A DNA stretch of 64,000 nt from Diadema antillarum (GCF_040938485.1 NW_027271005.1:1-64000), one strand, 5' to 3'; positions 7,452 to 29,882 are shown, counted from the stretch's first letter. A program made the numbers and translations. Notes: generated by a model from the letters alone, not told the origin.

Positions 7452-8080
7452 GAAATCAACTTCAGCCATCAGTGATAACCGTCTCAACTGCACACCACTG
7501 ACACCAGGCACAGAAAGTCCTTAATGGCATGATGGATTTTTTGTGATGCCAGAGATCCAGGAGGCCCCCAAGCACACTGGACACAGTGATGACCCAAAGA
7601 GCTTTCACCCATTGGTCAAGCACGTGCCATCAAGATCAAGACAGATTAAGTTTGCGTTTTGGTGCTAGTATGTGTTTATGTGTGTGTGAGTGTGACTCAT
7701 GATCTTTGGATCAGATTTTCAAATCCTGCCACAACTCTGAGTTTGTAACAGACTTCCCAATGTCTGCTGTTTAACAGAGCCTCAAAGCCTGTAATGTGAC
7801 CATCCAAGCATGACTGGAACTGACTGAAAGTGAGATACCAACCATTTTGATGGTCCATCTGACTGTAGATGCAGTGCATGTGTAGTGTTAGTGTTACTAC
7901 AAGTACCTGAGGGTATTAGGGTGTTGATAGTGCAGCTATGTTGTCGTGCTAAGCGTCAGTTTTCATACATCTACTACTAGAAGGGGTTGGAATATTATGT
8001 ACTCTCAGTTTCCTGGCTAGCAGATATGATTTGCCCCAAGGATTTTAACAAAGTGGAGGATTATTTTTAGGGTTCACTAT

Positions 8081-8422
8081 TTAGTCCACAGAGTGTAAAG
8101 CATTTTCAAAGTCCATGGTAAACTCTGAGTTTATACACTGTGCCACAGCAGTGAACTCGACTTCATAAGTGGGCAACAAAATACCCTGCTTATTTGTACA
8201 TTCTGTGGAGAGCACACTCCAGTCCATGCTGTTTCTGAGATACTGTTTTCCATCACAGTCAACCACATAACTTCTTGGAAATGAACTCTCTGTTACTATT
8301 GTTGCATCTTTCCACAGTTTATTTAACATTCTCATTTTCACTTCCTCCCCTGCTTGCAGCAGTTGGAGCTCATTTGTTCCACTGTAAAATACTTCTCTCT
8401 GTGTTGATTGTTTCACTTCCAA
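8081..8422 (-). pseudogene. Gypsy-type LTR retrotransposon pol C-terminal fragment
   Basis: WKDATIV...PRSYVVDCDGKQYLRN matches the W.PA.V....PRSY.V...G..YRRN motif at the end of Gypsy pol. Confidence 0.65.
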
Positions 8423-9289
8423 CCTCTCTTTGACACTTCCCCTCCCCCCACAACTGGCATGAGCACCTTGTTAGATGTTGAAAGAGTAGTTCTTGTCCTT
8501 CCATGCAGGAGCAGTTGTGCTGGGCTGACATTTAGCCCATCAATTGGTTTGTAATGTTTGTCCAAAATGGATCTGTCCAATCACTCTTTGCTCTTTTATG
8601 TATTTTTTCTTACAACTCGGTCTGTCTTATATGGAGGCATGAGTGCAAATGACACTCCTGACACCACGTAAGGCCAAAAACAACAACAAAAATGTTTGTT
8701 TGCCCTTATAATTGTCAAAACCCAAGAGGGTCGGCAGGTGTTTTTGTGTTTTGTTTTGGTTTTTTTAGATACCCTTTTTACCCATGCAATTTTGTAACTT
8801 AAAAGTAGGACATCTCATCTCTTAATAAACTCATCCGACAGCACCATATTCACTCAGGCCTTTAATTAGGCTATGCACTAGCACCGTAAAGAAGACAAAA
8901 AAGACTAGAAGACAAGACAAGTTTTGGTCTCTATGATACTTTAATTCAATTTACATTCTCAGATGACGTTTTCTTCTATACACCAATGTATTTAATAAAT
9001 CAAAAGACAACTATAGTCATGAAAAAGTAAGTTAAGGGGGGATCTGTATTTTTTAAACTTGAATTCTGAAAATGCATGTCATCGCTGGGGTGACAAAACC
9101 TTGTATTTCCATTTTTATATAAAGAAAAATTAGATTTTATGTATCTCATAGCTTTGAATGTTTAACCCAGCGTTTTAGGCTGATATACATACCTGCACCA
9201 TGTAGGCCCCATCTGCTTCTGCGTTGCGTTGAGGAAAGTCCAGACCTTTCTTTTCCATCAAATTTATAACCCGATTGTACAGTAGATCT

Positions 9290-10444
9290 CTATCGTTTAA
9301 TACCGGGTCCGCATTTTTTTCTTTTGGGTAGTGTCTGCTGTTTGGTGGACTGCATTAGCACCTCCAGTGCATTTACGGCATGATTTGTTTCTGGCAATTC
9401 TTCAATTTCAAGTTTAAGTTTGAATAGAATATGGCGTAACTTTAATACGCTCAACACTCCAAGCGATTCGTTCAAACTAACGTCTTTCCAGGGCCTGTTG
9501 GGCGAGGCAGAAACACTAACTGACAAACACTTATAAAGGTCTTCTTTGTTGAATTTAGCAAACAGCTCCAAAAAAGAGTACTTTTCAATGAGATGCTGGC
9601 AACTCAACTGCACACAGTTTTGCTGCCATGACAGCTGGTTACGGATACTGCAAAAGTGGCCATCTTAGCAGTCGTGCTGAAACTGTCTCGGACCCAACAC
9701 TGAAAACAGTGTTTCTGTTTTATTCCGTTAAAAAGAATTGGGGGTGGTAGTCTTGTAAGGAACTCTTTCCAGTACTAAGTTACTAGACTAGGTGTAGTGC
9801 CCAACTCTCTGAGTATTAGTGTTACTACTACTAAAAGTACTAGCTAGATTATCTAGAGTAGGAATTCTTCAAAAGTGTTAGTGTTTAATACTTCTTGTTT
9901 AAGTTATATAGCAAGTTTACCTGACTCCGCTCTCTCTTGAGGAAGGCACTGCCACTGCGTTGGCATGTGTTAATATTATCTGTATCTGTAACCATGTCCG
10001 TTGTTGACTTGGCAGCATTGGGTCTGGTAGTGGTACTCTCTCTGACGCTGTCACTGCTAGTGGCATTTTTAGCGCTACCAACAGTAGAATTAGTGGTTCC
10101 AGTAGTACTAGTACCTGCACCGGTATTTGTAACACCGACACTTGTTTGTGATCCACCTTTCCCTGACGGTGCCTTTAGACTGGGGACTGCGTCGGCTTTC
10201 AGCCTGAAGTTGGTCTTGAACCCCAGTCTAGCTTTCAATAGAGAAGTTTGTTCTCGACATCCGTCAAGAAAGTGGGCACTGCAGATATGGCTGCTGTTGG
10301 TGAGCTGGAAATCGGAGCGTGTGTTCCTTACGAACTTAGCCCACTCACAAGATACAACTTGACTTCGCAAAACTTTAAAAAATTAATATTTGTGTTCGCT
10401 TTAGAATTTCTGGTACATCCTCCAACCACGCAGGAACTAGGCAG
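9290..10444 (-). pseudogene. THAP zinc-finger protein remnant (transposon-derived), frameshifted, with a probable intron 9715-9920
   Basis: xPSSCVVGGC (C-x4-C) at 10444, then a frameshift into WAKFVRNTR..SHICSAHF..LKADAVPSL (W, CxxHF and AVP of THAP). A Thr/Ser-rich linker follows, then donor CAG|GTAAA at 9921. Confidence 0.75.
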
Positions 10445-10667
10445 TGTGAAAATTATTATAGAACCTCCTCCAGGACAAACAAACACAAAGAAAAGAAAGT
10501 TAATTCCTTGAAGGCTACTATGGTACATTTTTTTATCTCTATGAGATATTAAATTAGAACTACTCCCCATTATCTGGTAGTTTGCATAATAAGCACTACT
10601 AATACTATGGTACAACATTATATCTTCATAAGATGTCAAACTAGAATATACTCCACATCCCATTATC

Positions 10668-10872
10668 ATTGTGAAATATTCTAAGTTCACTCTTCTCTGA
10701 AAATGTCAAAGTCCTATCACTGTAAAATATTCTTAAATTCAGACTGCTCTGAAAATGTCAAAGTCCTATCACTGTAAAATATTCTTAAGTTCACACTGCT
10801 ATGAAAATGCCAAAGTCTTATCACTGTAAAATATTCTTAAGTTGCCACTTCTGTGAAAATGTCAAAGTCTTG
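10668..10872. repeat. 52-bp minisatellite, about 4 copies
   Basis: TGAAAATGTCAAAGTCCTATCACTGTAAAATATTCTT recurs at 10698, 10750, ~10802 and ~10854. Confidence 0.9.
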
Positions 10873-12379: not shown

Positions 12380-14033
12380 AAGTCTGATCATTCTGTCTTG
12401 CTATGGCACGAATCCTGCTGGACTGTTGAAGTATAATTTCATGTACTCCCTCTACTCTACTTCTTTGCTACTATGGTGTCTCTGATTGGTCCTCACACGA
12501 CTTCAGTGTCCTGCATATTGACAGATTCTCTCCACGTGCCTGGGATAGATAGTCATCTTCATTGTCAAGTTGTGCAGTCAGGGTATCTCTTCTCATGAGG
12601 TTGTGAAGGCAGATACAGGTTTTGATGATAAGTCTGACTGTATCTGGACCTTGCATCATTGTGATGAGAAGTACCTTCCACCGCTGGGCCAATATGCCAA
12701 AAACCATTCTCCACCTTCCCTCCCTGGATATTCTGTAGTTGGTGATTAACTCCTCTTCAGTCAGACTTCTGTGGGAGAATGGCTTCATAACGTAAGTTCT
12801 CAGGCCAAAGGCATCATCTCCTAGCAGGAAGTATGGCATGTCTTGGTCGTCATTCGGCATGGGATCTGGATCTGGAAAGTCAATAGTTCCATCTTCCAAA
12901 CACCCTTTCAACTCTGAGGCATTGTAAATCTGTGCATCTGACATCGATCTGTGGCCACCAACGTCAATCCACACAAACTTTCAGTCTGCATCAACCAAAT
13001 GATTCTATAGTTGGTGATTAGCTCCTCTTCAGTCAGACTTTTGTTGGAGAATGGCTTCATTCGGTAGGTTCTCAGGCCAAAGGCATGTCTTGGTCGTCAT
13101 TCAGCATGGGATCTGGATCTGGGAAGCCAATTTTCCCAGCTTCCAAATACCCCTTCAACTTTGATGCATTGTAAATCTGTGCACCTGACATCGATCTGTG
13201 GCCACCAACATCAATCCACACAAACTTGCAGTCTTCATCCACCAAATGATTCTATAGTTGGTGATTATCTCCTCTTCAGTCAGACCTCTGTTCGAAAATG
13301 GCTTCATCAGGTAGGTTCTCAGACCAAAGGCATAGTCTCCTAGCAGGAAGTATGGCATGTCTTGGTCGTCCTTCGGCATGGGATCTGGAAAGTCAATAGT
13401 TCCATCTTCCAAACACCCCTTCAACTCTGATGCATTGTAAATCTGTGCATCTGACATCGATCCGTGGCCATCAACGTCAGTCCACACAAATTTGTAATCA
13501 GCATCCACCAAAGCCATTAGCACTACAGAAAAGAAACCCTTGTAGCTGGAAAACAAGGAACCTGAGCCGGGCGGCTTTCTAATACCGACATGTTTTCCAT
13601 CAATGGAGGCACAGGCATGTGGGACATTCTACCTCTTCAAGAATTCATCAGCAAGTGGACGCCATTTATCTGGTGTTATCGGACTGGCGATTACTTCATC
13701 TTTCAATACATAGAGAATGGCTTGACAGACTTCAGTTATGAAGACGGAACGGGTGTAGCTGGCAACTCTGAAGTCATACTGGAGGGTTGAATACTTGTCA
13801 CCAGATGCTAAGTGGCGTATCATTGTAGTTAGTTTCAGGCTGAGTTCCAGTGATTTCCTGTAGTTAGTGTCTTTTTTGGTTAATATTGGACCACCTCTAT
13901 TAAGGAGTTCATCAAACATGTCAGGAGGCATTCTCAGGAAATTGAGGAATGACTGCTGATCTTTAATTTTTGTGCTGATAGAAGAATCACCTTGAGTAGT
14001 GCAACACAGCATTGTGTAGTATTTAGTAAGCAA
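12380..14033 (-). pseudogene. PIF/Harbinger transposase (DDE_Tnp_4 / HARBI1-like), degenerate, with an internal tandem triplication
   Basis: FFSVVLMALVDADYKFVW.DV.GHGSMSDAQIYN, PYFLLGDDAFGL...MKPF, NYRISR...FGILAQRW, CICLHNLMR and C-terminal YFNSPAG.VP.Q are all present; multiple stops and frameshifts. Confidence 0.9.
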
Positions 14034-14109: not shown

Positions 14110-14512
14110 AAAGTGATGTTTACAAATAGTCGCAGCTTGATCTTGAGTTTCTGAGGTGGGTGCGTTTGGAATGTGATTGGCGACTCGTGCCTCGGCTTGA
14201 GCTCGCTTCGTCTTCATTGCTATGCAGAACTTCATAACTAGTCCACGATTGTTCCAGATGGTAGAAATACTTGGGAATGCCAATTGCATGCCCATCTTTT
14301 TTTATTTGTTCTCTGTCGAAGTGCTGGGAACACAATCGGGCACGAACCGTGATCTGGAATTCATCCTGTCTTTGAAGTAACTTCTTCCAAGTCGCACACG
14401 CTGTGGAGCACCCGGAAACTTCACCCACGTCTCATATCCTGGCATATTTCTGTAGATTTTTTCGTTTATTGTCGTGAGACCAACAAATGGCAGCTTTGCA
14501 GTGACAACCCAT
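14110..14512 (-). pseudogene. Second THAP-domain remnant (homologous to 21170-21530)
   Basis: MGCHCKAAIC...(frameshift) W.KF...WKKLLQRQDEF...RLCSQHF...PKYF; nucleotide similarity to 21170-21530 is visible by eye. Confidence 0.6.
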
Positions 14513-15289
14513 AGTCATATTTACAGCAATTTCGCTAGAATGTGTCAAGATGAGTTGTGTTTACATAGTGTTGGGAACTTAGCTAGCTTGGGAGGCATGT
14601 TGGAAATACCAGACAGTTACTCCATGGTTGCAAACAGACAGCACTTTATTCAGAACAACTCTCTTGCTCAGCCATGTTCCTTATGGCTATATCAGTCCAT
14701 GTGTATGACAGTGTGTATGTGTGTATTACCATAGCCTGCTATACAATACTTTGCAGTTGCACATTATTACTCATTATGTGAAGGGCTCCACCTGGAGTCA
14801 CATACATTACATCCCCCTTTGTTTGCAAGGAAACATTCTTTGTCAGTAATCTACAAGGATATAGGATTATCTGTAATGGGAGATGCACAATCAATTCTGA
14901 TGTCATTTCTAAATCAAACACCTGTCTCGACAAGCGCTACATGCCTAACCCATCTCAGTAAGTATTGTCTAGCCTTGTACCAAAACAAACATCTGGTTAT
15001 CTAGAGTACCGTAACATCAACTTGATATTGGCTGAATATCTCTGAAGAATGAAACGCTAGTAACAAACATCCTAACACTTGCCTATCAAATACTTTACCG
15101 GTACTTACAACATAAGATCCTGGGGGCTGCACACAAAACCCTTTTTTTTTGTATCTTGCATCAAAACTTTGCATGTAGCAACATCATCTGTAAGGCATCA
15201 ACGTTGAACTGCCTTTCAAACTACCGTACCCTGGCGAATCAAGCATGAATCTATCAATGCTTCAACATATTTTACACTTTATACAGGAA

Positions 15290-15690: not shown

Positions 15691-15879
15691 TGGACTATAA
15701 TACTAGTATCTTGAGATTGCCTACTAATAAAACTTGTACTTAACATAATAGTGTGTGTCAGTGGTCCTCCAGATCTGAATTGCTCACTTGTGTTTATCAA
15801 TCAACGTTCATGCTGTGATATATGTTAAGTTTACAATGGTCAAACTGCATTAGAAACCAAGAGTGTACAACGCTCTCTG

Positions 15880-16135
15880 TTTGGTGTGCTCTGAGTCTGA
15901 CGATTTCGATGCACGTGGTCGATGCAGTCAACGGCTTTGGTTTATCATTTTGCGAAAGTTGCGTCATCTGAATGGCACTGTTTTCAGACACTGCACGCAT
16001 ATCAATACAGTTTTGCAATGTCAATTTCTCAGTTTGCAGTAGTTTCTCGCGGAGACCTTGGTCGCAGATTCCGCAAACGATTCGGTCCCGGAGAGGATCG
16101 TTCTCCAGGTCTCCGTACGTAGTTTACGCAGACGT
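15880..16135 (-). pseudogene. Gypsy gag fragment
   Basis: YGDLENDPLRDRIVCGICDQGLREKLLQTEKLTLQNCIDMRAVSE matches the YG.L....RDRIV.GI.D..LRE.LL...LTL gag motif. Confidence 0.75.
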
Positions 16136-16145
16136 AGTTTACGCA

Positions 16146-16470
16146 CAAACGGGAACTTAGAGTAATAATCTGAGATGATGAGGTAGTCATTTCTGTCAAG
16201 GTGAAACAAATCCGTAGCAAGAATCTGCCACGGATGGGTTGGAATGTCGTGGTTTACCAAGGGTTCCCTTGGCTGCGATCGCTGATTTTCCTGGCATATC
16301 TCGCAATTTCGCACCAGATCATCAATATCGCTGTTGATGTTTGCCCAGTACTCGCAATCCTTCGCTTTTAGCTTTGTTTTGGTTGCTCCTTGATGGCCTT
16401 CATGCAGCTTAGACAGCGTGTATGTGTGCATTGCATTCAGTATTATGACACGATTTCCTTTCATGATCAT
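16146..16470 (-). pseudogene. Gypsy integrase zinc-binding (H2C2) domain and start of the core domain
   Basis: LHEGHQG..KTK..A....YW..INSDI..LVRNCEICQ...PLVNHDIPTHPWQILATDLF...YLIISDYYSKFP. Confidence 0.9.
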
Positions 16471-16489
16471 GCCATCTTCGATCGCTTAC

Positions 16490-16900
16490 TCATCACGAAA
16501 TGACCTGTATGGTCCGAGATCGGGTGGTAATTCGCTTCGCTTTTCTATGGGAGAAACGACTTGAGAGGCAACAAAACAGCCAGAAGTTCCCTGTAATTCG
16601 AGGACCGACAGGAAATGGCATAACTCCAGTCGCCCCTCGCGTGTCGATGTCCTAAAACTGCCCCCCATGCGAGGTGTGAGGCATTCGTGATAATCTGGGC
16701 GGATACTGGTCGATGACATATCGACTTGCTGTTTCAAAATTGAACCACATTCTGCCACCAGGTCAAGTCCTCTCGTGTCTCACTATCGAAAAATAAAATC
16801 GTCTCCCAAGTAGATCTCGTCAAGAGTAAGCGATACACTCCATGTAATAACAGTTTCGCAGGATCTACACACCAGGCAATAGAAATGCATTGACCAGCAA
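16490..16900 (-). pseudogene. DIRS-type reverse transcriptase tether / RNase H fragment
   Basis: EDLTWW...ITNASHLAWGAVLG..ARGDW...SNYRELLAVLL.LKSFL..ISDH resembles the DIRS RNase H motif TDAS..GWGA..G.W..IN.LEL.A; contains stops. Confidence 0.7.
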
Positions 16901-17059
16901 TGCAGGCCAATGACCGAGCCGTGATGTATGGTTTAGTCAAGGCGCGGGATTCAACACTTCCGTGTACATCTTGCGTGCGCGAATGTTTTCTATCCTCTGC
17001 ATGCATGCATTGCAGTATACAATTACTGTATATCAGTATAGTTTCTAGTCTCGCTTGCG

Positions 17060-18520
17060 CCATGGCGACGATCCCGAATTATGACTTGTTTCTCTGGCAA
17101 ATAATAATTGTTGTTGTCATCGTACATACTCGCATGACCAGCATACGATTGCTGAACAAGCTATGTTTGCAATTCAGGCAAAAATTAAGGAGAAAGCGGT
17201 TTTTATTCGATTTGGAAACCAGGAGGAATCGCCGTCGCTGTTGGTTATTAACTTCGATCTCCATCACTGACACTGACAGATGAGAGGCTCGTGTGATTAT
17301 TGTCGGGTGCTTGTGCAGCTGCAATTGTTTCTTGGCCTGTTTGGGATGTAGCACTGCCACTGGCACTCCTACTAGTGCCACTGGCACTGGTGGCTGAGGC
17401 TGAGCCCGATGGCGATGCATAGCCAAAGCCAGAGCTAGAACTTACAATGTTTTTAGGTTCTGTGGCGGCTGTTTGTCCCCAGATAGCAAAGCACAGGTCA
17501 TAGAAGTCCATTTCTTGTCGATTTTGGCCACTTGTCTTGTTTGCAAATTTGACTGACATGAACTTTTTTTTTCAGATTTTTGAGTTTGGCTTTCACCTGT
17601 GTGGCCGTTCTTTCGTGGCCTTGCTCATTCAAAAGAACTGATATTTTTTCTAGTGCCGGTGCATCACTGCACTTACCGTTAATCTGTCTGTCAATCTCTT
17701 TGTCACTGCGAATTACCAAAAGTAAGTGTATCTCATCGTTGCTCCAATTTTGACAGTTACCTTGTGTTCTCGGCATACTCTCAAATATATTCTCTGCTGT
17801 TCAGCTATAATAATTATGAATGTAGAATGGATGGATGGATAAATATAAATGTCAGGGAAAACTAAAGGAATAAAGTACAAACTGTTACCGGTACGTAGAT
17901 ATCGAGGTCGATTTGCTGCTGTATAAATGTGCACTTGTGCCTGTGTACGTGTGTTTTATGCGCTCGTTGTATGTAGTAAAATTATGCAGCTCGCAGCGGA
18001 AGTGTTGTGTGCTTGCCCTCGATCAAAAAGGTGAACAGATTTTTAATAGTAAAATTCCTTATGTACTCAATCCAATTACATTTGCACAAGAATAATTATT
18101 TTTATACATACTACCAGTTTTACTCACATTTTTAATCGCATGATACAAATTTTTTTTAAAGTTTTATTCAATATCATATTAGGCAATTTGGCCATCTATT
18201 GTTCAGCAAACGTTGCATGCACGCATGTGAAGCCCTAACAGCAGATCAGCTGAGCTGAGCACTTTGACAATTTGTCGTTCGATGAAAACTTCATTGTTTA
18301 CATTTTCGTGAGCCTGCGTGCATGCGGGAAAGACAGGTGACCTTTTGACTGCACCCCGGCAATTATCCGCATAACTTTGGATTTGCGTTCACAAACTCCA
18401 AATCTGGTCCCGATGCTGCTATTATGCGGATAATAGAAGCGTCGAAAAAAAGCAGATAACTCTTGCCCCGCTCCAAAATTATGCAGATATTATCCGCATA
18501 ATTGAGTTTATGAAAGGGGT
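17060..18520 (-). mobile_element. Internally deleted Harbinger-type element with a Myb/SANT (trihelix) DNA-binding ORF (17248-17776, frameshift in an A-run near 17570)
   Basis: NWSNDEIHLLL.IR..EI..QI.G..A.EKIS..L.EQGHERTATQVKAKLKNLKK, then FM.VK.ANKTSG.NR..MDFYD..AIWG. The right end has repeated ATTATGCGGATAAT motifs and terminates in TTTATGAAAGGGGT; the left terminus was not found. Confidence 0.7.
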
Positions 18521-20030: not shown

Positions 20031-20585
20031 ACCCTAGTGGGATGAGTCCTCAAATGGGGATCAGAGCTTCTATAGTAGTAGAAAATAAATGGGATGAATA
20101 CAAATATATATGTTTATTTTATTCCATAATATATACACTAATAGGGGTCTAAAGGTCCTCAAGGGTAGAAACTGCAACCTAACTAAACAATGTGATAACA
20201 CACAATCCTCGAGTAAATGCTATTCATAAAGCAGTTTGAGGAAAGAAAGGTAAGCACACTAATAATGGAAATTTAACGGAGTTTGATGACAGATATTGCA
20301 TATATTGAATACACAATAATTTTTTTTGCACTTTCACAGAATATTACACTACTAAACAAGACAAATTGCTTAATACCATTCACTTATGTATCAATGAAAT
20401 TTCATTAATTGGAAAAATGCTATCTGCTCATCCTCCCTCGAGACATCGTTGATCTCTGCACAGTAATATGAAGACTGGAGCAGCACCCCATGTCTTTGCT
20501 GTGTCAAGATGTTCCTTCTTTGAGTTTTCTTTGCTGTCCATGATGACATCTGTAGGCCTAGTCTTCTATAAAAGAAATTGTAATT

Positions 20586-21763
20586 CTCGCTATCGCCAAT
20601 GACGTAAAAAGTACCCGGATGTGGCTTTTTCGTCAAGATTTAGTGCACTTGGTAGCAAGGGCACTTCCGGCGCGGGGCATAATTTGCACAACGCTAGCGT
20701 GCGCGTACGTGTACCTTACCTATAGCGCAGCGCCGACCACGGATAGTAGTACAGTAGCTTGTAGGCCGCTGCATGTGTACCGCCCGAGCCAGCGAGTGGC
20801 GCTGGCCAGGCCTGTCATACTCGTACACTGTAGTCCCCGCCGGTGGCCGGCCTTGCATTAGCATGCACCATAGACAGAAAGATCCGTCTGTCCGGAGGAC
20901 TCTTTTATATTTTGCCAGTTGACGGAGGGGATCGGTGAAGCCAGACGCAGTCTCCGCGGAACATTCCCCGACGGACAGATACAGACCGATATTTTGGTCA
21001 ACATGCACCACTGCACGCAGCGCATAAGCTAATTACATTGTACATAACACATACCGGTACGGCGTACTGCTTGATCATGCGATCGATGTGCACATCACAG
21101 ATCAGTCATCTCTGCATACGCTGAAAATATGCTGGAAAATATTCACCCACCTGGATATACAGTATATCGTCATGGAATGCCCATCTTTTTTTTTTCATTT
21201 GTTCTCTGTCGAAATGTCGCGAACACAATCGGGAACGAACAGTGATCTCGAACTTATCCTGTCTCCGAAGCAATTTCTTCCAAGTACTGTAAGTACGTAC
21301 AATGAAGCGTAGGCACTAGGCCTACTACCTAGTGCTACTATAATACATGTACTACCACTACTAGTAAGTCGCGCGTGCACGTACTGCGCTGTGGAGTCAC
21401 CCGCAAACTTCACCCACGCGGCCACGTCACGTCTCGCATGCCAGTAAGGGTCCTATATCTGCAGATTTTTTTCATTTATTGTCGTGCGAACAACACATGG
21501 CAGCTTCGCAGCAACAACCAATAGTCGTATTAACAGCAATTTCTTAAGAATGGAGAAATTTCAAATCATATTAAAGCTGTAATTCAAGTCGAGAAAACCG
21601 GAAGTACACGTAGAATACAGTCGGTTGTGTGTGTAAATAGCATTAGTCACGTATCACGCGCGTACGAACGGAAGTGACTTTGCTACCGGACTATCCCATA
21701 ATGCACCGTAAATGACGCTTAAATCAACATCCGGGTACTTTTTACGTCATTGGCGATAGCGAG
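20586..21763. mobile_element. Non-autonomous TIR element with perfect 37-bp TIRs and AATT flanks (Sola1-like target), carrying a THAP remnant (21170-21530, -)
   Basis: CTCGCTATCGCCAATGACGTAAAAAGTACCCGGATGT (20586-20622) is the exact reverse complement of 21727-21763; AATT lies on both sides. Confidence 0.85.
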
Positions 21764-23352
21764 AATTGGACATCCACATAAACAACATAATGCCTAAATG
21801 GAAGGAGAATGTCTGTCATAAGTACAGAGCTGCAACAACAACAAAAAAAAATAAGCCAAAAGATCTACAATTTTGTTTCTTGTGGGTTAATTGCAAACAT
21901 TATTTTTATTATCATGCTAACACTGAGTTCATTCATTGAGTCAAACTTAGGGGCAAAATGTAAAAATAATTTTGACTACATTATGAAAACCAGATTAATG
22001 TCAGTCTACACTGTATCGTAGTAGATTCAACACGATACCACAACAATGACAGGAAGGATTTTGTTTACTGATGGATGGAATATCAATTGATGCATAGTCA
22101 TCCACTTTTATAATCATGACAGACATTATACCGTGTGTCTCAAAGAAAGGCTATACACTTTTGAAATGCCCACCAAATAGAAAAAAATATACAATTCTGG
22201 CAGAAAGGTTTATATGTATGGATAGCTTATGAAAATTAGGTTGCACAGGAATTAGCCTTCCAATTTTGTGGGAGGTGAGTCCGTTGGAGCTTACAAAACT
22301 GAAGTTGATGTGATAAATTCATGATCAATTTCAATCTGTGGGAGAAGATTTATTTGTAAGGATAGTTACAATATGGTTTTATCTTTCATATGACACCAAA
22401 GTCAGAAAATGTTTCATGCATGGGTGAGCACTGTTCACTTTTGTAATGGATATGGAAATTAGGTTGCACAGGAGTGGGCCTTCCAATTTGTGGGAGGAAA
22501 TTCCTTTCTGAGATTATGGAATTATGATCAACTGTGATGAGTTTGGGTTTGCCGAGTGAAATTTGTGGTTTATGGGATTAACAGTTGATGCATGAGTGAA
22601 CATTAATAAACTTTATTATTGAAGCATTGCAACTTTCCCTTGTAGACTCAGTGTTGTGTCCATGGGGGTCGACAAGATGGGCAGATAGTGGTCAGGAGGA
22701 CAAGTATGCACCCCCCCCCCCCCCTTATTTCACTCTGTCTTCATGAGTGTGCCCGTGCATAATCTTAGCAATACATGTTCTTTGCCCTCCACTCCAAAAT
22801 ATCCGCAGACCACCTTCTCTTATCCCGAGTTCTTCCTACATTTTCCAAATTGGACTGGTTGCTATTACCCACAGATACCTGAAACCAATTCAATCAATCA
22901 GTCAATTTATCAAAACATGAAATCAGACAATAAACATTCAGCTTTCAATCACTTGATCAACAATGCATCACTCAATCAGTTAATCAGCTATCAATCAAGT
23001 ATTCAGTCACCATTCAGCTATTTCAATCAATTAATCATGCATAATCAAACTCATTCAATCACTCAATCAACCAACCCAACAGTCAGTTAAGCAGCTCAGT
23101 TCGCACATTTAATACAGTACAGTGTAACACAAATGTGTAACATGAACATGTATGTCTTTCTTTTCAGTTGATATTTATTTTAATTTTACAACTGTATCAT
23201 CCATCTTGTAAAAAAAAGAAAAAAAAAAGAATCCAAAAATCAAAGTCTGCCAGTTCACTGAGTTCAGTGGTCCACATGTCCACCTCCTCTTTCAATGCAC
23301 AATTGTGCTCTCTTCGTCATGTCCGCACAGCTCTCCTGACCGTTGCTCTGTC

Positions 23353-24217
23353 TCACCTAAGCTCATCCATCTCGTGGGCGATTCTTCTTCTGATTTCGTC
23401 CAAGTTGGCTGGAGGGGTAGTGTACGCCTTTGCCTTCAGATATCCCCACAGGAAAAAATCCAGAGGCGTAAGGTCGGGGGAAGGCGGGGGCCATTCAACA
23501 TCTCGATGCAAAGAGACAACCTGATCACCAAAAAGCTGGTTGAGACGCTCTGTCATTGCTCCCGAACGATGACGAGGAGCTCCAACTTGTGCCCACCATA
23601 CACGCTGAAAGCGACCATTTCGACGACGGCGGTATCTTGGAATCCTGTCAAGGGCAGGGACAACTTCCTCATCTATCATCTGGACATAGGCAGCTCCGGT
23701 AACGTTGATGTCAAAGAAAACAGGTCCGATGATGTCTCCATTCCCTGTGAGGACGGCCTAAACAGTCACCTTAGATCTGCTATCACTGCGTTTGTACTGA
23801 AACTCGTCAGGAGGGTGTCCCTGTTCTTGATATGCCCTCAGGTTGTGGGTATTCACTTGGGCATTCAAGGCAAAGCCAGACTCATCTCCAATGAGGAAGT
23901 CATCTAGGAAGCGGGCAGGTCTTTGAAACAGCCACTGACAAAACCTTAATCGGCGCTGGTGATCACCATGAAGCAGTTCATGCCGCTTGATCATCTGATA
24001 GGGATGAAATGTCAAGTCCAGTCGAGTGATCCTGTTGAAGGTTGCATTTGTCCAGAATCCCTATTCCATTACGACGATTGCTAATGGTTCCATTCTGGTG
24101 ATCTTCAAGAGCTTGGCGTACAGCTGCGATGTTTTCCGCCGATCTTCCAGTTCTTCTGCGCCCAGATCTTCCTTGATTGTGGTTATGACTGGACCCTGTT
24201 TCCTGATATTTCCTCAT
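23353..24217 (-). pseudogene. DD41D (rosa-type) Tc1/mariner transposase, frameshifted
   Basis: IGDESGFALNAQVNTHNLRAY; Q(V)GAPRH (QDGAP with GAT>GTT); WPPPSPDLTPLDFFLWGYLK; 41 residues between the second and third acidic positions. Confidence 0.85.
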
Positions 24218-24530
24218 GTTACTGTAGACTGTTGCGCGTGTTGGGCATCTTACATGCGGAAAGACTTGTCAGAACCTCCGAGGGACAGCAGTGGCACTGT
24301 TAATGCGATGGTATTCTGTTACCATAAAAGAACGCTGCTGCGGTGTGAACTGAGGCCTCTCTATCTTTGGTTGTCAGTCCAAGACTCCAAGATGAATGAG
24401 GACTGAGTAACAACTTACAGCTCTTAATTTATTCTTAATATATCATGACCAAGTGACACACTGTTACACACTTTTAGTTTTTTAACATCATTGACTTTGA
24501 ATAAAAACCTCCACCCCACATTGAACATCT

Positions 24531-24757
24531 CATTGATTTACTTAATACCCAGGTAGGGATTATGTAACATTGAATATTCAATTATGGATCATCAAAAAAA
24601 AAAAAAAAAGAATGTCAGAGATGTCAGCTATTTATTCTTCAGGTCAATGGGTAACCTGAATAATAAGTAGCCAGTAGCTGTGACATTCCTTTTTTAACAA
24701 AATGTATTTGAATAATGAATTTACATTATCCCCATCTGGTTATTAAGTAAATCAATG
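24531..24757. mobile_element. Small MITE nested in the mariner element
   Basis: CATTGATTTACTTAATA (24531-24547) is inverse to TATTAAGTAAATCAATG (24741-24757); similarity extends further inward. Confidence 0.55.
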
Positions 24758-25462
24758 TGCTATTCTACCAGTACTAATCTGAAAATAACTGCAATGTGGG
24801 GCGAAGGTTTTCATTCAAGTCACAGATGTAAGAAATAAGGGTGTGTAACATGGAAATTGCAACATGTACCATCACCTCATCCTGACTCACATGAACACAC
24901 CACTGAGTCTACCAGGGAATTTTGCAATGCTACAATATAATAAATGCAACTGTGGTTTACTCATGCATAAATGTTTGGTTGAATGAACCATAAAATTCAC
25001 TCAGCAAACCCAAACTGATCGCAATTGATCATAAATTTATCATATCAACTTCAGTTTTGTTAGCTCTAATGGACTCGCCTGTCGCAAATTTAAAAGGCTA
25101 ATTCCTGCGAGCAGTGCTCATTCAAGCATTAATTATTTTGAGACTTTTTGGTGTCATATGAAAGTTGAGTCCATAAGCTATCCATACATGTAAACCTTTT
25201 TCTCCAGAATCATATATTTCTTATTCGGCAGCCATTCCAAGAGTGTATAGGGTTTTTTTGAGACACATAGTATATGATCCTATAGACCCCTTTGTATGTC
25301 AGGCTATGTAAAATGGCCCTCTCAGTTGCAGATAAAACTACTGTAGTGGTGGCCAACTCACTCATAAGGTGAAGAAAGAATATGGCAATGATGCTTACCT
25401 GACTGGGAATGATGACACTCCTTGGCTCAGGTAGAATTATCGATCGCCCAGGGCCCAAAGAA

Positions 25463-25617
25463 TGTATGGATCTGGTTCCTTTGGGCGCATAGTTCTTTCT
25501 CCTCGATGTAGAGCATGTGCGCGCCCTCGGAAACCAAGGGCAGTCCGTCGGTCGTCGAGTCGGTCCGAGTCAGTCCAAGTCAGGCCGAAGTCGCTCCCCA
25601 CTACACTCTTCCCCATC
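25463..25617 (-). mobile_element. Candidate polypurine tract plus start of a 3' LTR
   Basis: The minus strand reads ATGGGGAAGAG|TGTAGTGGGG (PPT 25606-25614, TG at 25605), with a possible ..ATACA end at 25463. No partner LTR is present in the window. Confidence 0.4.
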
Positions 25618-25935
25618 GCATCGAAGCTTCCTGGTGGGGATGTGAGTCCCCAAGGTAGGCTCCACCCCGGTAAATGCAACCAAATTGGAAAGAAATAAGG
25701 GGATAGAAAGTCATGAGGGATATCGTCTATATCCCTCAGTCGGAGAGCCTATGCCTATCAAACTAAATAAACCGTCAAAAAATATAAATCTTCAAAATAT
25801 AAATGAGATAATTGACCCCCTATGATCAATTGCCCTAATAAAATAATTGCGTCCTCGATGAGGATATAAAAGTAACCCAAAATAAATTGCAAAAATTAAT
25901 GAATGCATAATAAATGCACTCTATTTCCTCCAACC

Positions 25936-27615
25936 TCACTCCCCCTCCGCGATGCGAAGGGAGTACAGCCGAGCAGCATTCTGAGCTGTGGCTGTACACA
26001 CCTCCCTCACCGTCTGGCCGCGGATCCTCGTGACCAGATTGACCGTCTCACCTAAATAGGCGGACGTGTTCCGCTTTCCCTTTGCCGACGGGGGTGGCAT
26101 GTATGGGGCATCCGTTTCCAGCAGAAGGCGGTTCAAGGGAACTACCTGCAGTCCCCGCTTCTACAGCTCCCCGAAGACTTCTACCATGGCTGTAAAGCCA
26201 AAGTAGGTCTGGGGAAAGTGGCACAACCAGTCCTTCACCACATTTGGACTGGTGGTGGTGCAGTGGACATGGATCCGCTGCGCCTTCCCACAATGTTGCT
26301 GGAAATAGTCCCGGCACATACTGTGGACAGTCAACCCCATGGGGTCATTTCGACTCCCCCGCAGATGTACCACCAACACCTTCTGAGAGATGTGGGGCAG
26401 GGAGAGGATGTTCTGGAGGAGCTCGATCTGATCCTGAATGGTCTAGTCCGACCTCGCTCACTCTGACAACTGCTGGATCTTTAAGCAGTTCCCCGACTTG
26501 ACTGACAGTGGCCTGGGACACCTCTGAGGCATGCTTGGGATGGATGCCCACTGCCACCCGCCAATTTAGACGATCAGGAAAGGCGATGAACTCAAACCGT
26601 GAGGGATCACAATAATTGATGACCCCCTCGGCCACCTCCACACTCACCTGGGGTTTCTGCCCTGTGATGGTCGTAAGGCATTGTAACCCCTTCTGGCCCA
26701 GGCTATGCTCAAGGCGGTCAAGATGGGCATGGGAATCCACCACTCGCAAAGGGGCAGTATTTCCCTTCGCCAAACCCCTCCCGGAACGCTGAGGACTGGA
26801 TTTGCCCTTCAATTGCCTGAGAGGGAGGACCTTGCTGGTCAGCTGGGATCCTTGAGATGGTGAGCTGCCCAGCTGTTTGACCACCTTTTGCAGGATCTGG
26901 CGGGTACGCTCCCTGGCCATGGTAGAGGGAGATGGGACCATGCTGGCGGAAGCTTGCTCGCTGTCCACTGGTCCAGTTCTGGAGGTCAAACGCGAGGATG
27001 TGGGAGGACCCTTGGTCTTAACATCCTCACCTTCCAGTGGGGTTGAGGGTAGAAGAGTAGTGCTCTGGGGCGTGCTCCAGACCACTCTGCTCCTGATTGC
27101 TGGGAGGGGGCAGAGGTCCTGCAGGGACCGTAGGACTTGATAGTGAAGAGATTTCCATTGGCTCTTCTGCAGGCTCTCCCCTTGTGGTCTGGTCCCGAGC
27201 CCCCGGCTGATTTAATGGGCAAACTCCTGAGGTGGCTGTATCCCTCACCCCGTTAGCGGCACCAGGATTGTCAGCCCATGCAGAGGCTGCTGGAAGAGCA
27301 TCCGCCTCCGCTCCGCCCTCTAAGGGAGGGGCACCCTGAGCTGCTGGGACATCCTGTGTGCGGGCTGCAAAGGCTGTCCTTTGGGCAGCTGACAACCTGT
27401 TAAACAGGAATGCCAGGACCCTGGGGTGAAGGAGGCACGCAGGGGAATTGAGTGGCCTGACCGTGAACCGGGGCTTTTCCGGCAAGCCCATATGCGCACA
27501 CACAGCTCGAAACTCCGCCGCCAGCTCCTCCGAGACCGATCCGCATTCTGATCGCCACATTCTGTTGACGAAACGGACCAGCCCATTGATGGTGCCACCC
27601 CACTGCCTTCCCAGA
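25936..27615 (-). pseudogene. Intronless TatD-family nuclease ORF with an N-terminal unknown domain and low-complexity linker (at least two frameshifts, one premature stop)
   Basis: All TatD motifs occur in order: VDSHAHLD, AVGIHP, VSEVGLD, LVVHLR, IHVHC, LNRLLLETDAPY, T.QNAARLY. The segment is visibly more GC-rich than its flanks. Confidence 0.85.
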
Positions 27616-27619
27616 ACAC

Positions 27620-28850
27620 AGCTTCTGTGTCTTTCATTTCAGCTGTTCGTTTTGAACGAAGTGAGGCTATTCTCTTTCTTTCTTTGTCTCTTTCTTTTTC
27701 TTTCATTTCAAGTGTTCGTTCTGCACGGCTAGATGCTCTCCTTGTTCAGTCTTTCTCTGCTTCTGTTTCTTTCATTTCAGCTGTTTGTTTTGATCGAAGC
27801 AAGGCTAGTTCTTTTTCTCTCTTTCTCCTTTTCCATGTCTTTTATTTCTGCAGGCTTCTTTTTCCGAGCTTCCATTTTTCTCAATCTGTCTCTTTCTTTA
27901 ACCGTTTGCTTTTGTTCAAGTGATTGTTTCATGCGATATTCAGCTTTCTTTTGTGTCTCTTTGCTTCTTTCCTCTTCTTTTCTCCTCTTTCTAGCACCTG
28001 ATGGTTCCTCGTCTTCACTCATCTTTCTTCGTCTGAATTCCTCCTTGCGTTTTTTTATGCCTCCGCCACGAAGTGGTGCCGGAGGCATTATTTTCTTCAT
28101 TTTGCTTTTATGACTGGTCTGCAAAATACCCAAATAATAGATTCTTTGGCTGAGTGCGAGTTGAAAGAATGGGTAACAAGGTTGATGGTGTCACCTCGAA
28201 TAAGTCATTGGGAATGCCCAGACTAGTTGCCAATTGTTTGACATGGTTGACTACCTCATGGATCAATAGAAATGAAAGAAGAAGTGCTTTGCCACCTTCG
28301 CTCAACATTCCCTCATCATCCCGACTGTGGCTGTCGAAAATGAAGTACTTTGATGATTTCTGGAAGAGTCCAATCGTGTAGCTTGGTGTATGCATGCCTA
28401 TGGTGATAAATGCTATTTGATGATGGAGCACTCCTTGTACAATGGCATCACGGAGGGTGTATTGCCCGCTGTCTGTATCTGTTTGTGCTGTGTGAATGGT
28501 ACCTGCCATTGGATTCCCTCTTTTTAATCGATAAGTATTCAGATGTGTACTGTTGAATTCTGGCAGTTCAGTGATCATCAAATGTGTCATTGAGCTCTCT
28601 GCTGTTAGTTTACTGTACATCCTGGCTCCATATTGAAGAACATTATTGATGTCTCTGTTTGTCCATGATACAGGATTTTGTTCTTTTGCACGGAGAAGAA
28701 ACTGTAGGAGATTGCATGTGCATTGATTTCCAGCCGCATCACCATAAATGGCATTGCCTTGGTTGTAGTCAGCTCTTGCAACAGTTCTTTTAGTTTGTCT
28801 TGCCACTGTGGCCTGGTGCTTGGAGCTCTCATCTTGTTTTTACTCCTACC
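27620..28850 (-). pseudogene. Helitron-type ORF fragment: viral-tegument-like deubiquitinase (VTD / peptidase C76-like) followed by 23-aa charged (STPR-like) repeats
   Basis: Cys box YNQGNAIYGDAAGNQCTCN and His box YFIFDSHSRD..G...GKA; downstream 69-bp repeats encode EKERDKERKRIASLRSKRTAEMK-type units. Confidence 0.75.
28057..28088 (+). repeat. Solo 5' hairpin of HINE family A
   Basis: ATGCCTCCGCCACGAAGTGGTGCCGGAGGCAT is nearly identical to 5262-5293 and sits between T-runs. Confidence 0.75.
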
Positions 28851-29882
28851 AATCAAAGAAAAACAATGTAAAATAAATTAAATTCATAAGAAAAAAATTT
28901 TTTATCAATACTTGTTTTACAAGACATGTAAAATTTGTATTAAAGTTTTAAAGTAAAAAATATGCTACAGTATTTCACTTAGGTATATTTCTTATTATCA
29001 TACAAAAATAAAGTATTTAATTTTAAATTCAGTATGATGTTTGTATGTTACATTTGTACTGTTCAGCAATTTCAGTCTGGTTTCTGTGAAGTTCTTGTAA
29101 TAATACAGGTTACGCGAGGCATTACTTCACTGAGTTGGGGCTGTGCGTACAGTAAATAAACAAAAAATTGATTATCTTATTTCTTTAAAATATGGAATAA
29201 AACATTTAAATGAATGAAATAAAACATTTATCTAAATCAAAGCTCCACACTTACTTTTTTGGTGATGACCCGTTCGGGCCACCAAATTCATCAAATTGTA
29301 TTTTTTGTGGCCCAAGAGTGGAAAGTGGTGGCCCGGAACAAAGAAAAACCTATAGTTTATGTACATTATTTTAAAAATTTGGGTTGCCTGATCGGGCCAC
29401 CAGATTGACCAGAATCAACATTTTATTCAAATCTGGTGGCTCGAAGCCAAGTTTTGGTTGTCCTGGACCACCGGGACACTGCTATTGTAGAGCCTGTTTT
29501 AATACTTATTTTTAATACATATGAAGTTCACATTAAGATTTAAAGTGAAAAATATTATTTCACTTCAGTATATTTCTCATTCTCATACCAAAATTAAGTA
29601 TTTAATTCTAGATTCAGTATGATGTTTGTATGTTACACAAGGCATTACTTCATGGGGGTATGCAGTATGTTTCAATGATTCTTGTGATACTACATGTACA
29701 TACCTATTACAAGTATTCTGGATTCCTTTTTCTGCCGCTGAAGGAAGCTTGCATGACCTGTAGTTTTCAATCTGTGTTTTCACGACTTGCCATTAAATGT
29801 TCTTTCCCATTTGTAGCATAGCCTAGTCACAAAACAAATGAAATACTGTAATGTAATGTGCTAATTCATGTAACCAGTACAA

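What the first reader, a model, noticed from the sequence alone, without database searches (positions are those of the whole stretch)
8000..28900. Candidate flamenco-like uni-strand piRNA cluster: 13 of 13 transposon coding remnants point the same way
Seen: in ~21 kb directly downstream of HEMK1 every recognisable TE coding remnant is on the minus strand. These are Gypsy pol end 8081, THAP 9290, Harbinger transposase 12380, THAP 14110, Gypsy int/gag 15880, DIRS RT/RH 16490, Myb/SANT 17248, P-like 18591, MULE-like 19575, THAP 21170, mariner 23353, TatD 25936 and VTD-Helitron 27620. The only possible + remnant is a weak transposase-N-terminus-like stretch at 17060-17240, part of the same element as the Myb ORF. 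If orientations were independent and random, the two-sided probability is 2 x (1/2)^13 = 1/4096, and still 1/512 if only 10 are independent. The pieces are short, come from unrelated retro- and DNA-transposon superfamilies, are nested, and are often locally duplicated. Known: Drosophila flamenco is a single-strand transcript through TE fragments oriented antisense to it, lying downstream of a host gene. DNA transposons have no obvious reason to show orientation bias in ordinary DNA. Inference: a + strand transcript (HEMK1 read-through or a nearby promoter) would make this an antisense piRNA source in a non-insect animal.
Basis: partly seen in the sequence, partly recalled or inferred. Interest (0 to 1): 0.88.

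Follow-up and report, generated by a model that had tools for sequence, protein, structure and literature searches.

The report
Co-oriented transposon graveyard, sea-urchin spacer
In a sea urchin (Diadema antillarum), the gap between two housekeeping genes is filled with broken transposons whose readable coding pieces all point the same way, which a piRNA-producing locus would show but which about ten insertions can also show by chance, and sequence alone cannot decide.

Summary
The window is the first 64 kb of Diadema antillarum contig JBFRCO010000117.1. The 8-29 kb block lies between HEMK1 and kish-B/TMEM167B, both on the + strand.

The core observation holds. A symmetric Pfam scan of all ORFs of at least 55 aa found 0 families on + and 11 on - (THAP x3, Harbinger DDE x2, integrase, Myb/SANT, P-like RNase H, TatD, Helitron N-terminal protease).

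"13 of 13" is overstated:
- Several pieces belong to one element.
- Three labels are unsupported.
- About 8-10 insertions are independent, giving p of roughly 0.002-0.008, on boundaries chosen after the fact.

Plus-strand transposons do exist:
- A complete DIRS in the kish-B intron.
- Non-autonomous Helentrons in the HEMK1 intron and at 37 kb.
- Two more Helentrons inside the allelic copy of the block.

The whole-window tally is about 11:3 (p about 0.06).

The block does not meet the flamenco criteria I could test. It is 21 kb against 227-1085 kb, it is mostly DNA transposons, and it shows no poly(A)-signal depletion on +. Small RNAs and transcripts could not be examined.

My verdict is a lineage-specific transposon graveyard. 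Co-orientation is most likely chance (0.45), and a real + strand piRNA source remains possible (about 0.3).

The parts
345..7451 (+). HEMK1 (MTRF1L release factor glutamine methyltransferase-like), the upstream host gene. Its coding sequence ends '...[15 protein letters not shown]' before the block begins.
   Evidence: Called gene and protein P0124; alignment with the allelic and D. setosum orthologues; MTS and PrmC_N Pfam hits.
5262..6340 (+). Non-autonomous Helentron (HINE) in a HEMK1 intron. It is + oriented and absent from the allelic haplotype and from D. setosum.
   Evidence: Empty sites. Sub-terminal inverted repeat of 12-13 bp, 3' stem-loop and T strings at both borders, matching the HINE anatomy in PMC4067079.
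8084..8470 (-). ORF with a motif like the C-terminus of an LTR-retroelement integrase, recognised by eye only. Shared with D. setosum and with the allelic haplotype.
   Evidence: No Pfam hit; no BLASTP match to the allelic Gypsy integrase; conserved in L002 and L007.
8564..9679 (.). Unit that is tandemly amplified in D. setosum (at least 4 copies, period 1854 bp).
9888..10705 (-). THAP-domain remnant: C-terminal part in ORF 9888-10382, likely N-terminal part in ORF 10331-10705 in another frame.
   Evidence: PF05485 E=9.9e-6. The N-terminal part is by eye only.
12474..14033 (-). Nearly full-length PIF/Harbinger transposase with an internal 247-bp tandem duplication (12835-13512).
   Evidence: DDE_Tnp_4 E=1.4e-9 and 1.4e-14; tandem repeat; the allelic copy is annotated as a 128-aa gene on the same strand.
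14123..14542 (-). THAP family copy A, 84% identical to copy B at 21177-21552.
   Evidence: THAP E=0.002; direct repeats D9 and D10; self-BLAST. A haplotype breakpoint at 14052 separates it from the Harbinger.
15800..17078 (-). One LTR-retroelement composite. Reading along the - strand: a pol piece, the integrase zinc finger (16024-16485), then gag (15800-16123). The window haplotype has a 1.7-kb deletion at 16114/16129.
   Evidence: Integrase_H2C2 E=7.8e-12. The allelic haplotype has one 276-aa ORF with Integrase_H2C2 and rve, then the integrase C-terminus, about 700 bp, then gag. The DIRS label is not supported.
17251..17800 (-). Myb/SANT-like ORF, possibly the second gene of the Harbinger element.
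   Evidence: Myb_DNA-bind_4 E=3.1e-9. The link to the Harbinger is an inference.
18594..18905 (-). Fragment of the RNase H-like domain of a P-element/THAP9-type transposase.
   Evidence: TNP-like_RNaseH_N E=3.1e-9.
19438..19965 (-). ORF running over a 132-bp x3 tandem repeat, of unknown origin.
   Evidence: Tandem repeat; no credible Pfam hit.
20553..21796 (-). Short element bounded by 76-nt inverted repeats that carries THAP family copy B (21109-21315).
   Evidence: Inverted repeat I3; THAP E=2.5e-4.
22127..25274 (-). Tc1/mariner-like element with long inverted terminal regions (about 22127-22670 and 24884-25274). Transposase ORFs lie at 23356-24268.
   Evidence: Inverted repeats; weak match to the Sleeping Beauty catalytic domain, E=0.002; no Pfam hit.
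25550..27617 (-). GC-rich piece encoding a complete TatD DNase domain in three frames, plus an upstream unknown region. It is shared with the allelic haplotype, which diverges at 27617. The element type is unknown.
   Evidence: TatD_DNase profile 1-104, 105-178 and 191-253; GC 0.54; L005 1-2089 is 92.5% identical.
28111..28839 (-). N-terminal cysteine-protease domain of a Helitron/Helentron Rep-helicase protein. It is truncated: no Rep or helicase domain is present in the window.
   Evidence: Herpes_teg_N E=2.2e-11. There are 794 relatives. Long relatives have the order Herpes_teg_N, DUF6570, Helitron_like_N, PIF1.
37297..38064 (+).
43423..50343 (+). kish-B/TMEM167B, the downstream host gene.
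   Evidence: DUF1242; cluster members.
44465..49434 (+). Complete DIRS-like retroelement with inverted termini, in sense orientation inside the kish-B intron. It is absent from the allelic haplotype and from D. setosum, so it is a recent insertion.
   Evidence: RVT_1 E=5e-23 and Phage_integrase E=2e-11; inverted termini; absence in L004 and L005.

Best explanation
The block is a transposon graveyard specific to the Diadema lineage. Nested insertions, later deletions and local tandem duplications expanded a HEMK1 to kish-B spacer that is only 5-7 kb in other sea urchins to about 36-43 kb. In the window's haplotype, about 8-10 independent decayed coding fragments happen to lie on the minus strand. 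I think this co-orientation is most probably an unselected outcome. It comes from a small number of events, some of them linked, and from boundaries drawn after the fact around the run. A 1.75-Gb, transposon-rich genome should hold many such runs. What is shown: the anatomy, the orientations, the allelic and cross-species comparisons. What is inferred: that no selective process is needed.
For: - Independence is lower than claimed. TatD is one domain in three frames. The pol, integrase and gag pieces are one structure in the allele. The two THAP copies are one family.
- With 8-10 events, p = 1/128 to 1/512. By rough estimate, thousands of comparable transposon blocks in a 1.75-Gb assembly (size from PMC13511894) would yield many such runs by chance.
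- Plus-strand elements lie just outside the chosen limits, and two lie inside the allelic block. The allelic block tallies about 12:2 (p about 0.013) and the whole window about 11:3 (p about 0.06).
- The insertions that can be dated as recent and polymorphic are all + oriented: the DIRS and three of the four HINE copies.
- Poly(A) hexamers are not depleted on +.
- The spacer is 6.8 kb in S. purpuratus and 5.2 kb in L. variegatus, so the block is a recent expansion and not a conserved locus.
- No protein-coding gene is called in 1-17451 (apart from HEMK1) or in 33423-43422.
Against: - Ten of ten on one strand is still unusual.
- Two extra remnants present only in the allele are also on the minus strand: a gag-like piece and a Gypsy integrase with PHD finger. 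So is the single THAP ORF in the S. purpuratus spacer.
- The fragments come from unrelated superfamilies that share no known orientation preference.
- The genome-wide frequency of such runs was not measured, so 'expected somewhere' is an estimate.
Confidence: 0.45

Rival explanations
1. The block is a unistrand piRNA source. A + strand Pol II transcript, either HEMK1 read-through or one from its own promoter near 7.5-8 kb, would run through the block and be processed into piRNAs antisense to the embedded transposons. Sense insertions would be purged because they disrupt the precursor.
For: - All Pfam-detectable remnants are antisense to the common direction of both flanking genes.
- The extra remnants found only in the allele are also on the - strand.
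- The content is fragmentary, nested and mixed across superfamilies.
- Sea urchins have Piwi (Seawi) and clustered, transposon-matching 28-nt RNAs (PMC13666137, citing Wei 2012).
- CpG o/e at 8-14 kb (0.35-0.39) is as low as in the HEMK1 gene body (0.38). This is compatible with a methylated, transcribed domain, but it says nothing about strand.
Against: - No small-RNA or transcript data were available.
- The block is 10-50 times smaller than flam-like clusters, and only a minority of its units are Gypsy/LTR-type. In Drosophila the bias is driven by Gypsy alone.
- There are 22 AATAAA and 6 ATTAAA hexamers on +.
- Plus-oriented HINE copies sit in the allelic block.
- The base rate is low: piRNA clusters cover 0.27% of a snail genome (PMC6128900).
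- The spacer is short and transposon-poor in other urchins.
Confidence: 0.3
2. The orientation was filtered by ordinary transcription, with no piRNA role. The spacer would be crossed by + strand transcripts, such as a long HEMK1 3' UTR or read-through, or upstream kish-B starts. Sense-oriented transposons carrying splice, poly(A) or promoter signals would be removed by selection, as is known for transposons inside genes.
For: - Both neighbours are + strand housekeeping genes, and their order and orientation are the same in D. antillarum, D. setosum, S. purpuratus and L. variegatus.
- CpG depletion continues from HEMK1 into the block.
- Antisense bias of transposons inside transcription units is established knowledge for mammalian LINE and LTR elements.
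Against: - The known genic bias is moderate (roughly 60:40) and weak for DNA transposons. It would not give 10:0.
- A sense HINE sits in a HEMK1 intron, and a complete sense DIRS sits in the kish-B intron.
- Poly(A) hexamers are not depleted on +.
- The block lies after the HEMK1 stop codon.
Confidence: 0.15
3. The fragments are co-oriented because they were brought or joined together as a unit. Candidates are a decayed Helitron that captured fragments in its own orientation, or a template-switch or tandem LTR-element chimaera.
For: - A Helitron N-terminal fragment sits at the right edge on the same strand.
- TatD looks like an intron-less captured or retro-copied gene.
- The order integrase, about 700 bp, then gag on one strand indicates a tandem or recombinant LTR structure.
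Against: - The allelic haplotype lacks the Helitron fragment next to TatD.
- Breakpoints between haplotypes fall between fragments: at window 14052, 14768, 15146 and 16114 and at 27617. The homology to D. setosum stops at 9679. This fits separate events.
- No Helitron termini bounding the block were found.
- This can explain two or three of the fragments at most.
Confidence: 0.1

Closest known systems
Drosophila flamenco and flam-like unistrand piRNA clusters (PMC10643416)
   Same: The transposon fragments are co-oriented opposite to the presumed direction of transcription. The block lies downstream of a co-oriented host gene. The content is fragmentary and nested and varies between haplotypes and species.
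   Different: - Flam-like clusters span 227-1085 kb; this block is 21 kb.
- Their bias is driven only by Gypsy elements; this block is mainly THAP/P-like, Harbinger, Tc1/mariner and Helitron fragments.
- No small RNAs, promoter or precursor transcript have been shown here.
- The host is an echinoderm, not an insect.
Aedes aegypti unidirectional flam-like cluster (PMC7161354, title and abstract only)
   Same: A single-strand locus outside Drosophila, proposed from co-oriented inserted sequences.
   Different: That locus is supported by transcription and small-RNA data and is rich in endogenous viral elements. Neither property was shown here.
Antisense orientation bias of transposons inside transcription units (established knowledge for mammalian LINE and LTR elements)
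   Same: The retained elements are antisense to the local direction of host transcription.
   Different: The block lies after the HEMK1 stop codon, not in an intron. The bias here is complete and includes DNA transposons. Sense elements sit in the introns of both neighbouring genes.
Ordinary nested-insertion transposon islands in intergenic DNA
   Same: Mixed superfamilies, truncations, internal deletions, tandem duplications, presence/absence differences between haplotypes, and lineage-specific expansion of a spacer.
   Different: Such islands normally show mixed orientations. This one shows 10:0 for coding remnants.

Membership tests
flamenco-like unistrand piRNA cluster | Strong strand bias of transposon fragments, antisense to cluster transcription | tested here: inconclusive
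   Coding remnants are 10:0 on the minus strand. The direction of any transcript is unknown. Plus-oriented HINE copies sit in the allelic block.
flamenco-like unistrand piRNA cluster | Enrichment for Gypsy-type LTR elements, which alone carry the bias (PMC10643416) | tested here: not met
   Only the composite at 15800-17078 and possibly the ORF at 8084-8470 are LTR-type. The remaining units are DNA transposons, a Helitron fragment or the TatD piece of unknown type.
flamenco-like unistrand piRNA cluster | Size of hundreds of kb (227-1085 kb in Drosophila) | tested here: not met
   The block is 21 kb. The whole spacer is 36 kb.
flamenco-like unistrand piRNA cluster | 24-32-nt, 1U-biased small RNAs from one strand only | not testable with these tools
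   No small-RNA data are reachable. [quoted passage not shown]
flamenco-like unistrand piRNA cluster | A discrete Pol II promoter and a long single-strand precursor transcript | not testable with these tools
   No expression data. The only indirect signal is that AATAAA is not depleted on the + strand.
flamenco-like unistrand piRNA cluster | Syntenic conservation of the locus and its bias, with turnover of content | tested here: inconclusive
   D. setosum has a 43-kb spacer. The 20 kb of it that could be reached has no Pfam-recognisable remnant on either strand, and the central 23 kb could not be reached. The S. purpuratus and L. variegatus spacers are 6.8 and 5.2 kb.
Helitron/Helentron (fragment at 28111-28839) | Rep (HUH) and PIF1-type helicase domains | tested here: not met
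   Only the N-terminal protease domain is present. No Helitron_like_N or PIF1 hit was found in the window. Full-length relatives have both. It is a truncated remnant.
HINE (non-autonomous Helentron; 5262-6340 and related copies) | Sub-terminal inverted repeats of about 13 bp, a 3' stem-loop, insertion in TT with T strings at the borders, no target-site duplication, central tandem repeats (PMC4067079) | tested here: met
PIF/Harbinger element (12474-14033, possibly with 17251-17800) | DDE_Tnp_4 transposase plus a Myb/SANT-like second ORF | tested here: met
   That the two ORFs belong to one copy is an inference. Terminal repeats and target-site duplication were not sought.
P element / THAP9-type transposon (18594-18905) | An N-terminal THAP domain joined to a TNP-like RNase H catalytic domain | tested here: inconclusive
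   Both domains occur on the minus strand. However, the nearest THAP (21109-21315) sits in its own element bounded by inverted repeats.

The most novel reading that the evidence does not exclude
The block is the first described echinoderm unistrand piRNA source. It would be a compact (about 20-kb) trap dominated by DNA transposons, transcribed on the + strand as read-through from, or just downstream of, the housekeeping gene HEMK1. It would have been built within the Diadema lineage by expansion of an ancient, short HEMK1 to kish-B spacer.
Probability: 0.3. Interest if true: 0.6.

Novelty: new member of a known kind. Interest (0 to 1): 0.35.

Why it matters
If the block does produce + strand piRNAs, it would extend flamenco-style antisense trapping to a deuterostome invertebrate and to DNA transposons. 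It would also provide a small locus, resolved on two haplotypes, in which to watch a cluster being built. piRNA clusters have hardly been mapped in echinoderms (PMC13666137).

If it does not, the case is a useful caution. A perfect orientation run of coding remnants can arise from about ten events once linked pieces and boundaries chosen after the fact are taken into account.

Either way, the locus documents a roughly six-fold expansion of a conserved gene spacer driven by transposons, with many differences between the two haplotypes.

Tried and rejected
- The search for homologous proteins on the Helitron-protease ORF found nothing, because its relatives are longer than the length filter allows. 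The representative search solved this.
- Exact look-ups of two block ORFs as called genes found nothing on record.
- Last HEMK1 exon lying beyond the block, which would make the block an intron: rejected. The annotated protein ends '...[10 protein letters not shown]' and the gene ends at 7451. My own first guess for that exon, at 7124, did not fit the splice phase.
- The DIRS label for 16489-17078: comparison with the window's own intact DIRS pol gave only a non-significant match at the expected position, E=1.1.
- Integrase label for 8084-8470: no match to the allelic Gypsy integrase.
- Orthology between the S. purpuratus spacer THAP gene and the Diadema THAP remnants: none, E of 3 or worse.
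- Test in the D. setosum lineage: the two reachable 10-kb ends of its spacer have no Pfam hit on either strand. I could not bridge the central 23 kb, nor allelic contig positions 636823-648916, because no gene is called there to anchor a fetch.
- Poly(A)-signal depletion on +: not seen.
- Base-composition skews: explained by the transposons' own coding strand, so not informative.
- Rfam and tRNA scans found nothing.
- A herpesvirus-like endogenous element as the source of the Herpes_teg_N hit: rejected, because long relatives carry Helitron Rep and helicase domains.

Full report
**Origin and context**

An exact look-up of one ORF placed the window on Diadema antillarum (long-spined sea urchin) assembly GCA_040938485.1, contig JBFRCO010000117.1. 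Window coordinates equal contig coordinates, so the window is the first 64 kb of the contig. It contains no N runs. I took no contig for human.

Where a spliced protein was needed, I used database records found by single-exon references: P0001, P0119, P0121, P0123 and P0124. The joined-model step was left out.

Host genes on the + strand:
- HEMK1 lies at 345-7451. Its protein ends '...[15 protein letters not shown]', as in its orthologue.
- kish-B/TMEM167B lies at 43423-50343.
- Apart from HEMK1, no protein-coding gene is called in 1-17451 or in 33423-43422. The gene-call status of 17451-33423 could not be seen.

The block therefore lies in the intergenic spacer, after the HEMK1 stop codon.

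**Checking the observation**

Stop-to-stop ORFs are strand-asymmetric only inside 8000-28900. ORFs of at least 100 aa number 12 on + and 26 on -. ORFs of at least 150 aa number 1 and 8. The flanks are balanced.

I ran a symmetric test by scanning every ORF of at least 55 aa on each strand against Pfam at E<=0.01. The 62 + strand ORFs gave no family. The 68 - strand ORFs gave 11 families.

Per-ORF scans placed these hits, all on the - strand:

| Coordinates | Pfam domain | E-value |
|---|---|---|
| 9888-10382 | THAP | 1e-5 |
| 12474-12980 | DDE_Tnp_4 | 1.4e-9 |
| 13158-13628 | DDE_Tnp_4 | 1.4e-14 |
| 14123-14431 | THAP | 0.002 |
| 16024-16485 | Integrase_H2C2 | 8e-12 |
| 17501-17800 | Myb_DNA-bind_4 | 3e-9 |
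| 18594-18905 | TNP-like_RNaseH_N | 3e-9 |
| 21109-21315 | THAP | 2.5e-4 |
| 25939-27211 | TatD (three ORFs) | best 1.7e-15 |
| 28111-28839 | Herpes_teg_N | 2e-11 |

The long + strand ORFs mostly lie opposite these coding pieces. The core observation is therefore real: every recognisable coding remnant is on the minus strand.

**What the pieces are**

- *Helitron fragment.* The Herpes_teg_N ORF has 794 relatives. Long relatives have the domain order Herpes_teg_N, DUF6570, Helitron_like_N, PIF1. It is the N-terminal protease domain of a Helitron/Helentron Rep-helicase protein, truncated here.
- *TatD.* The three TatD ORFs cover profile positions 1-104, 105-178 and 191-253. They are one intron-less TatD domain with two frameshifts, in a piece with 54% GC.
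- *Mariner.* This call rests on long inverted terminal regions (about 22127-22670 and 24884-25274) and a weak match to the Sleeping Beauty catalytic domain, E=0.002. Pfam found nothing.
- *THAP copies.* The THAP pieces at about 14.3 kb and 21.3 kb are 84% identical copies of one family. The second sits in a 1.24-kb unit bounded by 76-nt inverted repeats.
- *Unsupported labels.* 'THAP 9290' (ORF 9293-9664), 'MULE-like 19575' (an ORF over a 132-bp x3 tandem repeat) and 'DIRS RT/RH 16490' have no support. The 'Gypsy pol end 8081' rests on a motif seen by eye only.

**A second haplotype and three other urchins**

The assembly is incompletely collapsed (PMC13511894). Contig JBFRCO010000079.1 carries an allelic or very recent paralogous copy, 90-97% identical. 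It is collinear with window 1-17550 and 25550-27617, and again from 38069 on.

This copy shows the following:
- The window haplotype has a 1.7-kb deletion at 16114/16129.
It is followed by the integrase C-terminus, about 700 bp, and then gag. The pieces at 15800-17078 are therefore one LTR-retroelement structure.
- Segments present only in the allele carry two further minus-strand remnants. One is gag-like (PNMA, E=0.002). The other is a Gypsy integrase with a PHD finger (E=6e-8).
- The allele diverges from the window at 27617. The TatD piece and the Helitron fragment are therefore separate.

In D. setosum the two genes are 43 kb apart. Homology downstream of HEMK1 runs to window 9679. Beyond that point, D. 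setosum has at least four tandem copies (period 1854 bp) of the unit at 8564-9679. The two reachable 10-kb ends of its spacer have no Pfam-recognisable remnant on either strand. The central 23 kb could not be fetched.

In S. purpuratus the spacer is 6.8 kb and holds one intact 312-aa THAP ORF on the minus strand. That ORF is not detectably orthologous to the Diadema THAP pieces. In L. variegatus the spacer is 5.2 kb with nothing recognisable.

The gene pair and its orientation are therefore ancient. The transposon block is an expansion within the Diadema lineage.

**Plus-strand elements exist**

It has RVT_1 and Phage_integrase domains and inverted termini. It lies in the kish-B intron and is absent from the allele and from D. 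setosum.

A non-coding family has the following anatomy:
- It begins ATGCCTCCGCCA.
- Near its 3' end it carries the inverted copy TGGCGGAGGCAT, followed by a small stem-loop and ...CATTTCTAG.
- It lands in T runs without a target-site duplication.
- It carries internal tandem repeats.

This is the anatomy of non-autonomous Helentrons (HINEs) as described in PMC4067079. All four copies are + oriented:
- window 5262-6340, in a HEMK1 intron, with the site empty in the allele and in D. setosum;
- window about 37297-38064;
- two insertions in the allelic block, at window sites 9052 and 15146.

**Statistics**

I count these independent, orientable units in the window's block:
1. ORF 8084-8470
2. THAP 9888-10705
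3. Harbinger transposase, with or without the Myb ORF
4. THAP copy A
5. the LTR composite
6. the P-like RNase H fragment
7. THAP copy B
8. the mariner-like element
9. the TatD piece
10. the Helitron fragment

That gives 8-10 units, depending on merges.

| Tally | Minus : plus | Two-sided p |
|---|---|---|
| Window block, 8 units | 8:0 | 1/128 |
| Window block, 10 units | 10:0 | 1/512 |
| Allelic block | about 12:2 | about 0.013 |
| Whole window, adding a by-eye LINE RT fragment (-) near 38.1 kb | about 11:3 | about 0.06 |

The block's boundaries were drawn around the run. The genome-wide null was not measurable here.

**Other signals**

- AATAAA occurs 22 times on + and 27 times on - in the block. 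Both counts exceed the composition-based expectation, so there is no depletion on +.
- CpG o/e is 0.38 in HEMK1 and 0.56 in the block. It is 0.35-0.39 at 8-14 kb and peaks near 1.0 at 16-18 and 20-22 kb. This is compatible with a germline-methylated domain but carries no strand information.
- Rfam and tRNA scans found nothing.

**Interpretation**

A flamenco-type reading needs one-strand piRNAs and a precursor transcript, and neither is testable here.

Of the testable criteria taken from Drosophila (PMC10643416), size (227-1085 kb) and Gypsy dominance of the bias are not met. Only the strand bias is met, and only for coding remnants.

For a base rate, piRNA clusters cover 0.27% of a snail genome (PMC6128900). 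In sea urchins, only a testis survey in M. nudus exists.

I weighed a prior of a few per cent for a transposon-dense stretch against a chance probability of 0.002-0.008. I also allowed that many non-Drosophila clusters show little orientation bias. On that basis I put:
- about 0.3 on a real + strand piRNA source;
- about 0.45 on an unselected run;
- about 0.15 on orientation filtering by ordinary + strand transcription;
- about 0.1 on physical linkage (Helitron capture, or a tandem or recombinant LTR structure), which explains only a few of the pieces.

**Verdict**

The interpretation cannot be decided from sequence.

The finding is a reasonable candidate worth one small-RNA mapping experiment. 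It is weaker than '13 of 13, p = 1/4096' suggests. If true, it would be a new member of a known kind of locus rather than something categorically new.

Noticed in passing
window 44465-49434: A complete DIRS-like retroelement (three long ORFs, reverse transcriptase plus tyrosine recombinase, inverted termini) inserted in sense orientation in the kish-B intron. It is absent from the allelic haplotype and from D. setosum, so it is probably recently active.
   Followed up: partly
window 5262-6340 and 37297-38064; allelic contig at window sites 9052 and 15146: A non-autonomous Helentron (HINE) family with presence/absence differences between haplotypes. All four copies share one orientation and sit in T runs.
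   Followed up: yes
L002 17527-24000 (D. setosum OZ188187.1): The unit homologous to window 8564-9679 is amplified into at least four tandem copies of 1854 bp, just downstream of HEMK1 in D. setosum.
   Followed up: partly
L009 5491-6429 (S. purpuratus): The short HEMK1 to kish-B spacer of S. purpuratus holds one intact 312-aa THAP-domain ORF on the minus strand, the same strand as the Diadema THAP remnants. There is no detectable orthology to them.
   Followed up: partly
window 16114-16129: The window haplotype has a 1.7-kb deletion that removed the integrase core, the integrase C-terminus, a putative LTR and the start of gag. All of these are present in the allelic contig.
   Followed up: yes
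window 25550-27617: A GC-rich (54%) piece encodes a full TatD DNase domain with no introns, preceded by about 200 aa of unknown conserved sequence. Whether it is a transposon-encoded gene, a retro-copy or a Helitron capture is unresolved.
   Followed up: no
window 1-345 and L007 7983-9598: The window starts at a contig end. Its first 209 bases are identical to the allelic contig, which then carries 1.4 kb that the window lacks. This is typical of a haplotig break. The HEMK1 model on this contig (P0124) has an 89-aa N-terminal extension absent from the allele and from D. setosum, which is probably an annotation artefact.
   Followed up: partly
window 34430-35292: A repeat with internal GC-rich tandem units is 96.5% identical to a copy lying inside the kish-B gene of the allelic contig (L005 13167-14009). 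It is another mobile element that differs between the haplotypes.
   Followed up: no
window 16001-18000, 20001-22000 and 30001-34000: Local CpG o/e peaks (0.95, 1.01 and 0.74-0.87) in an otherwise CpG-depleted 64 kb. They could be young insertions or unmethylated promoter-like islands.
   Followed up: no
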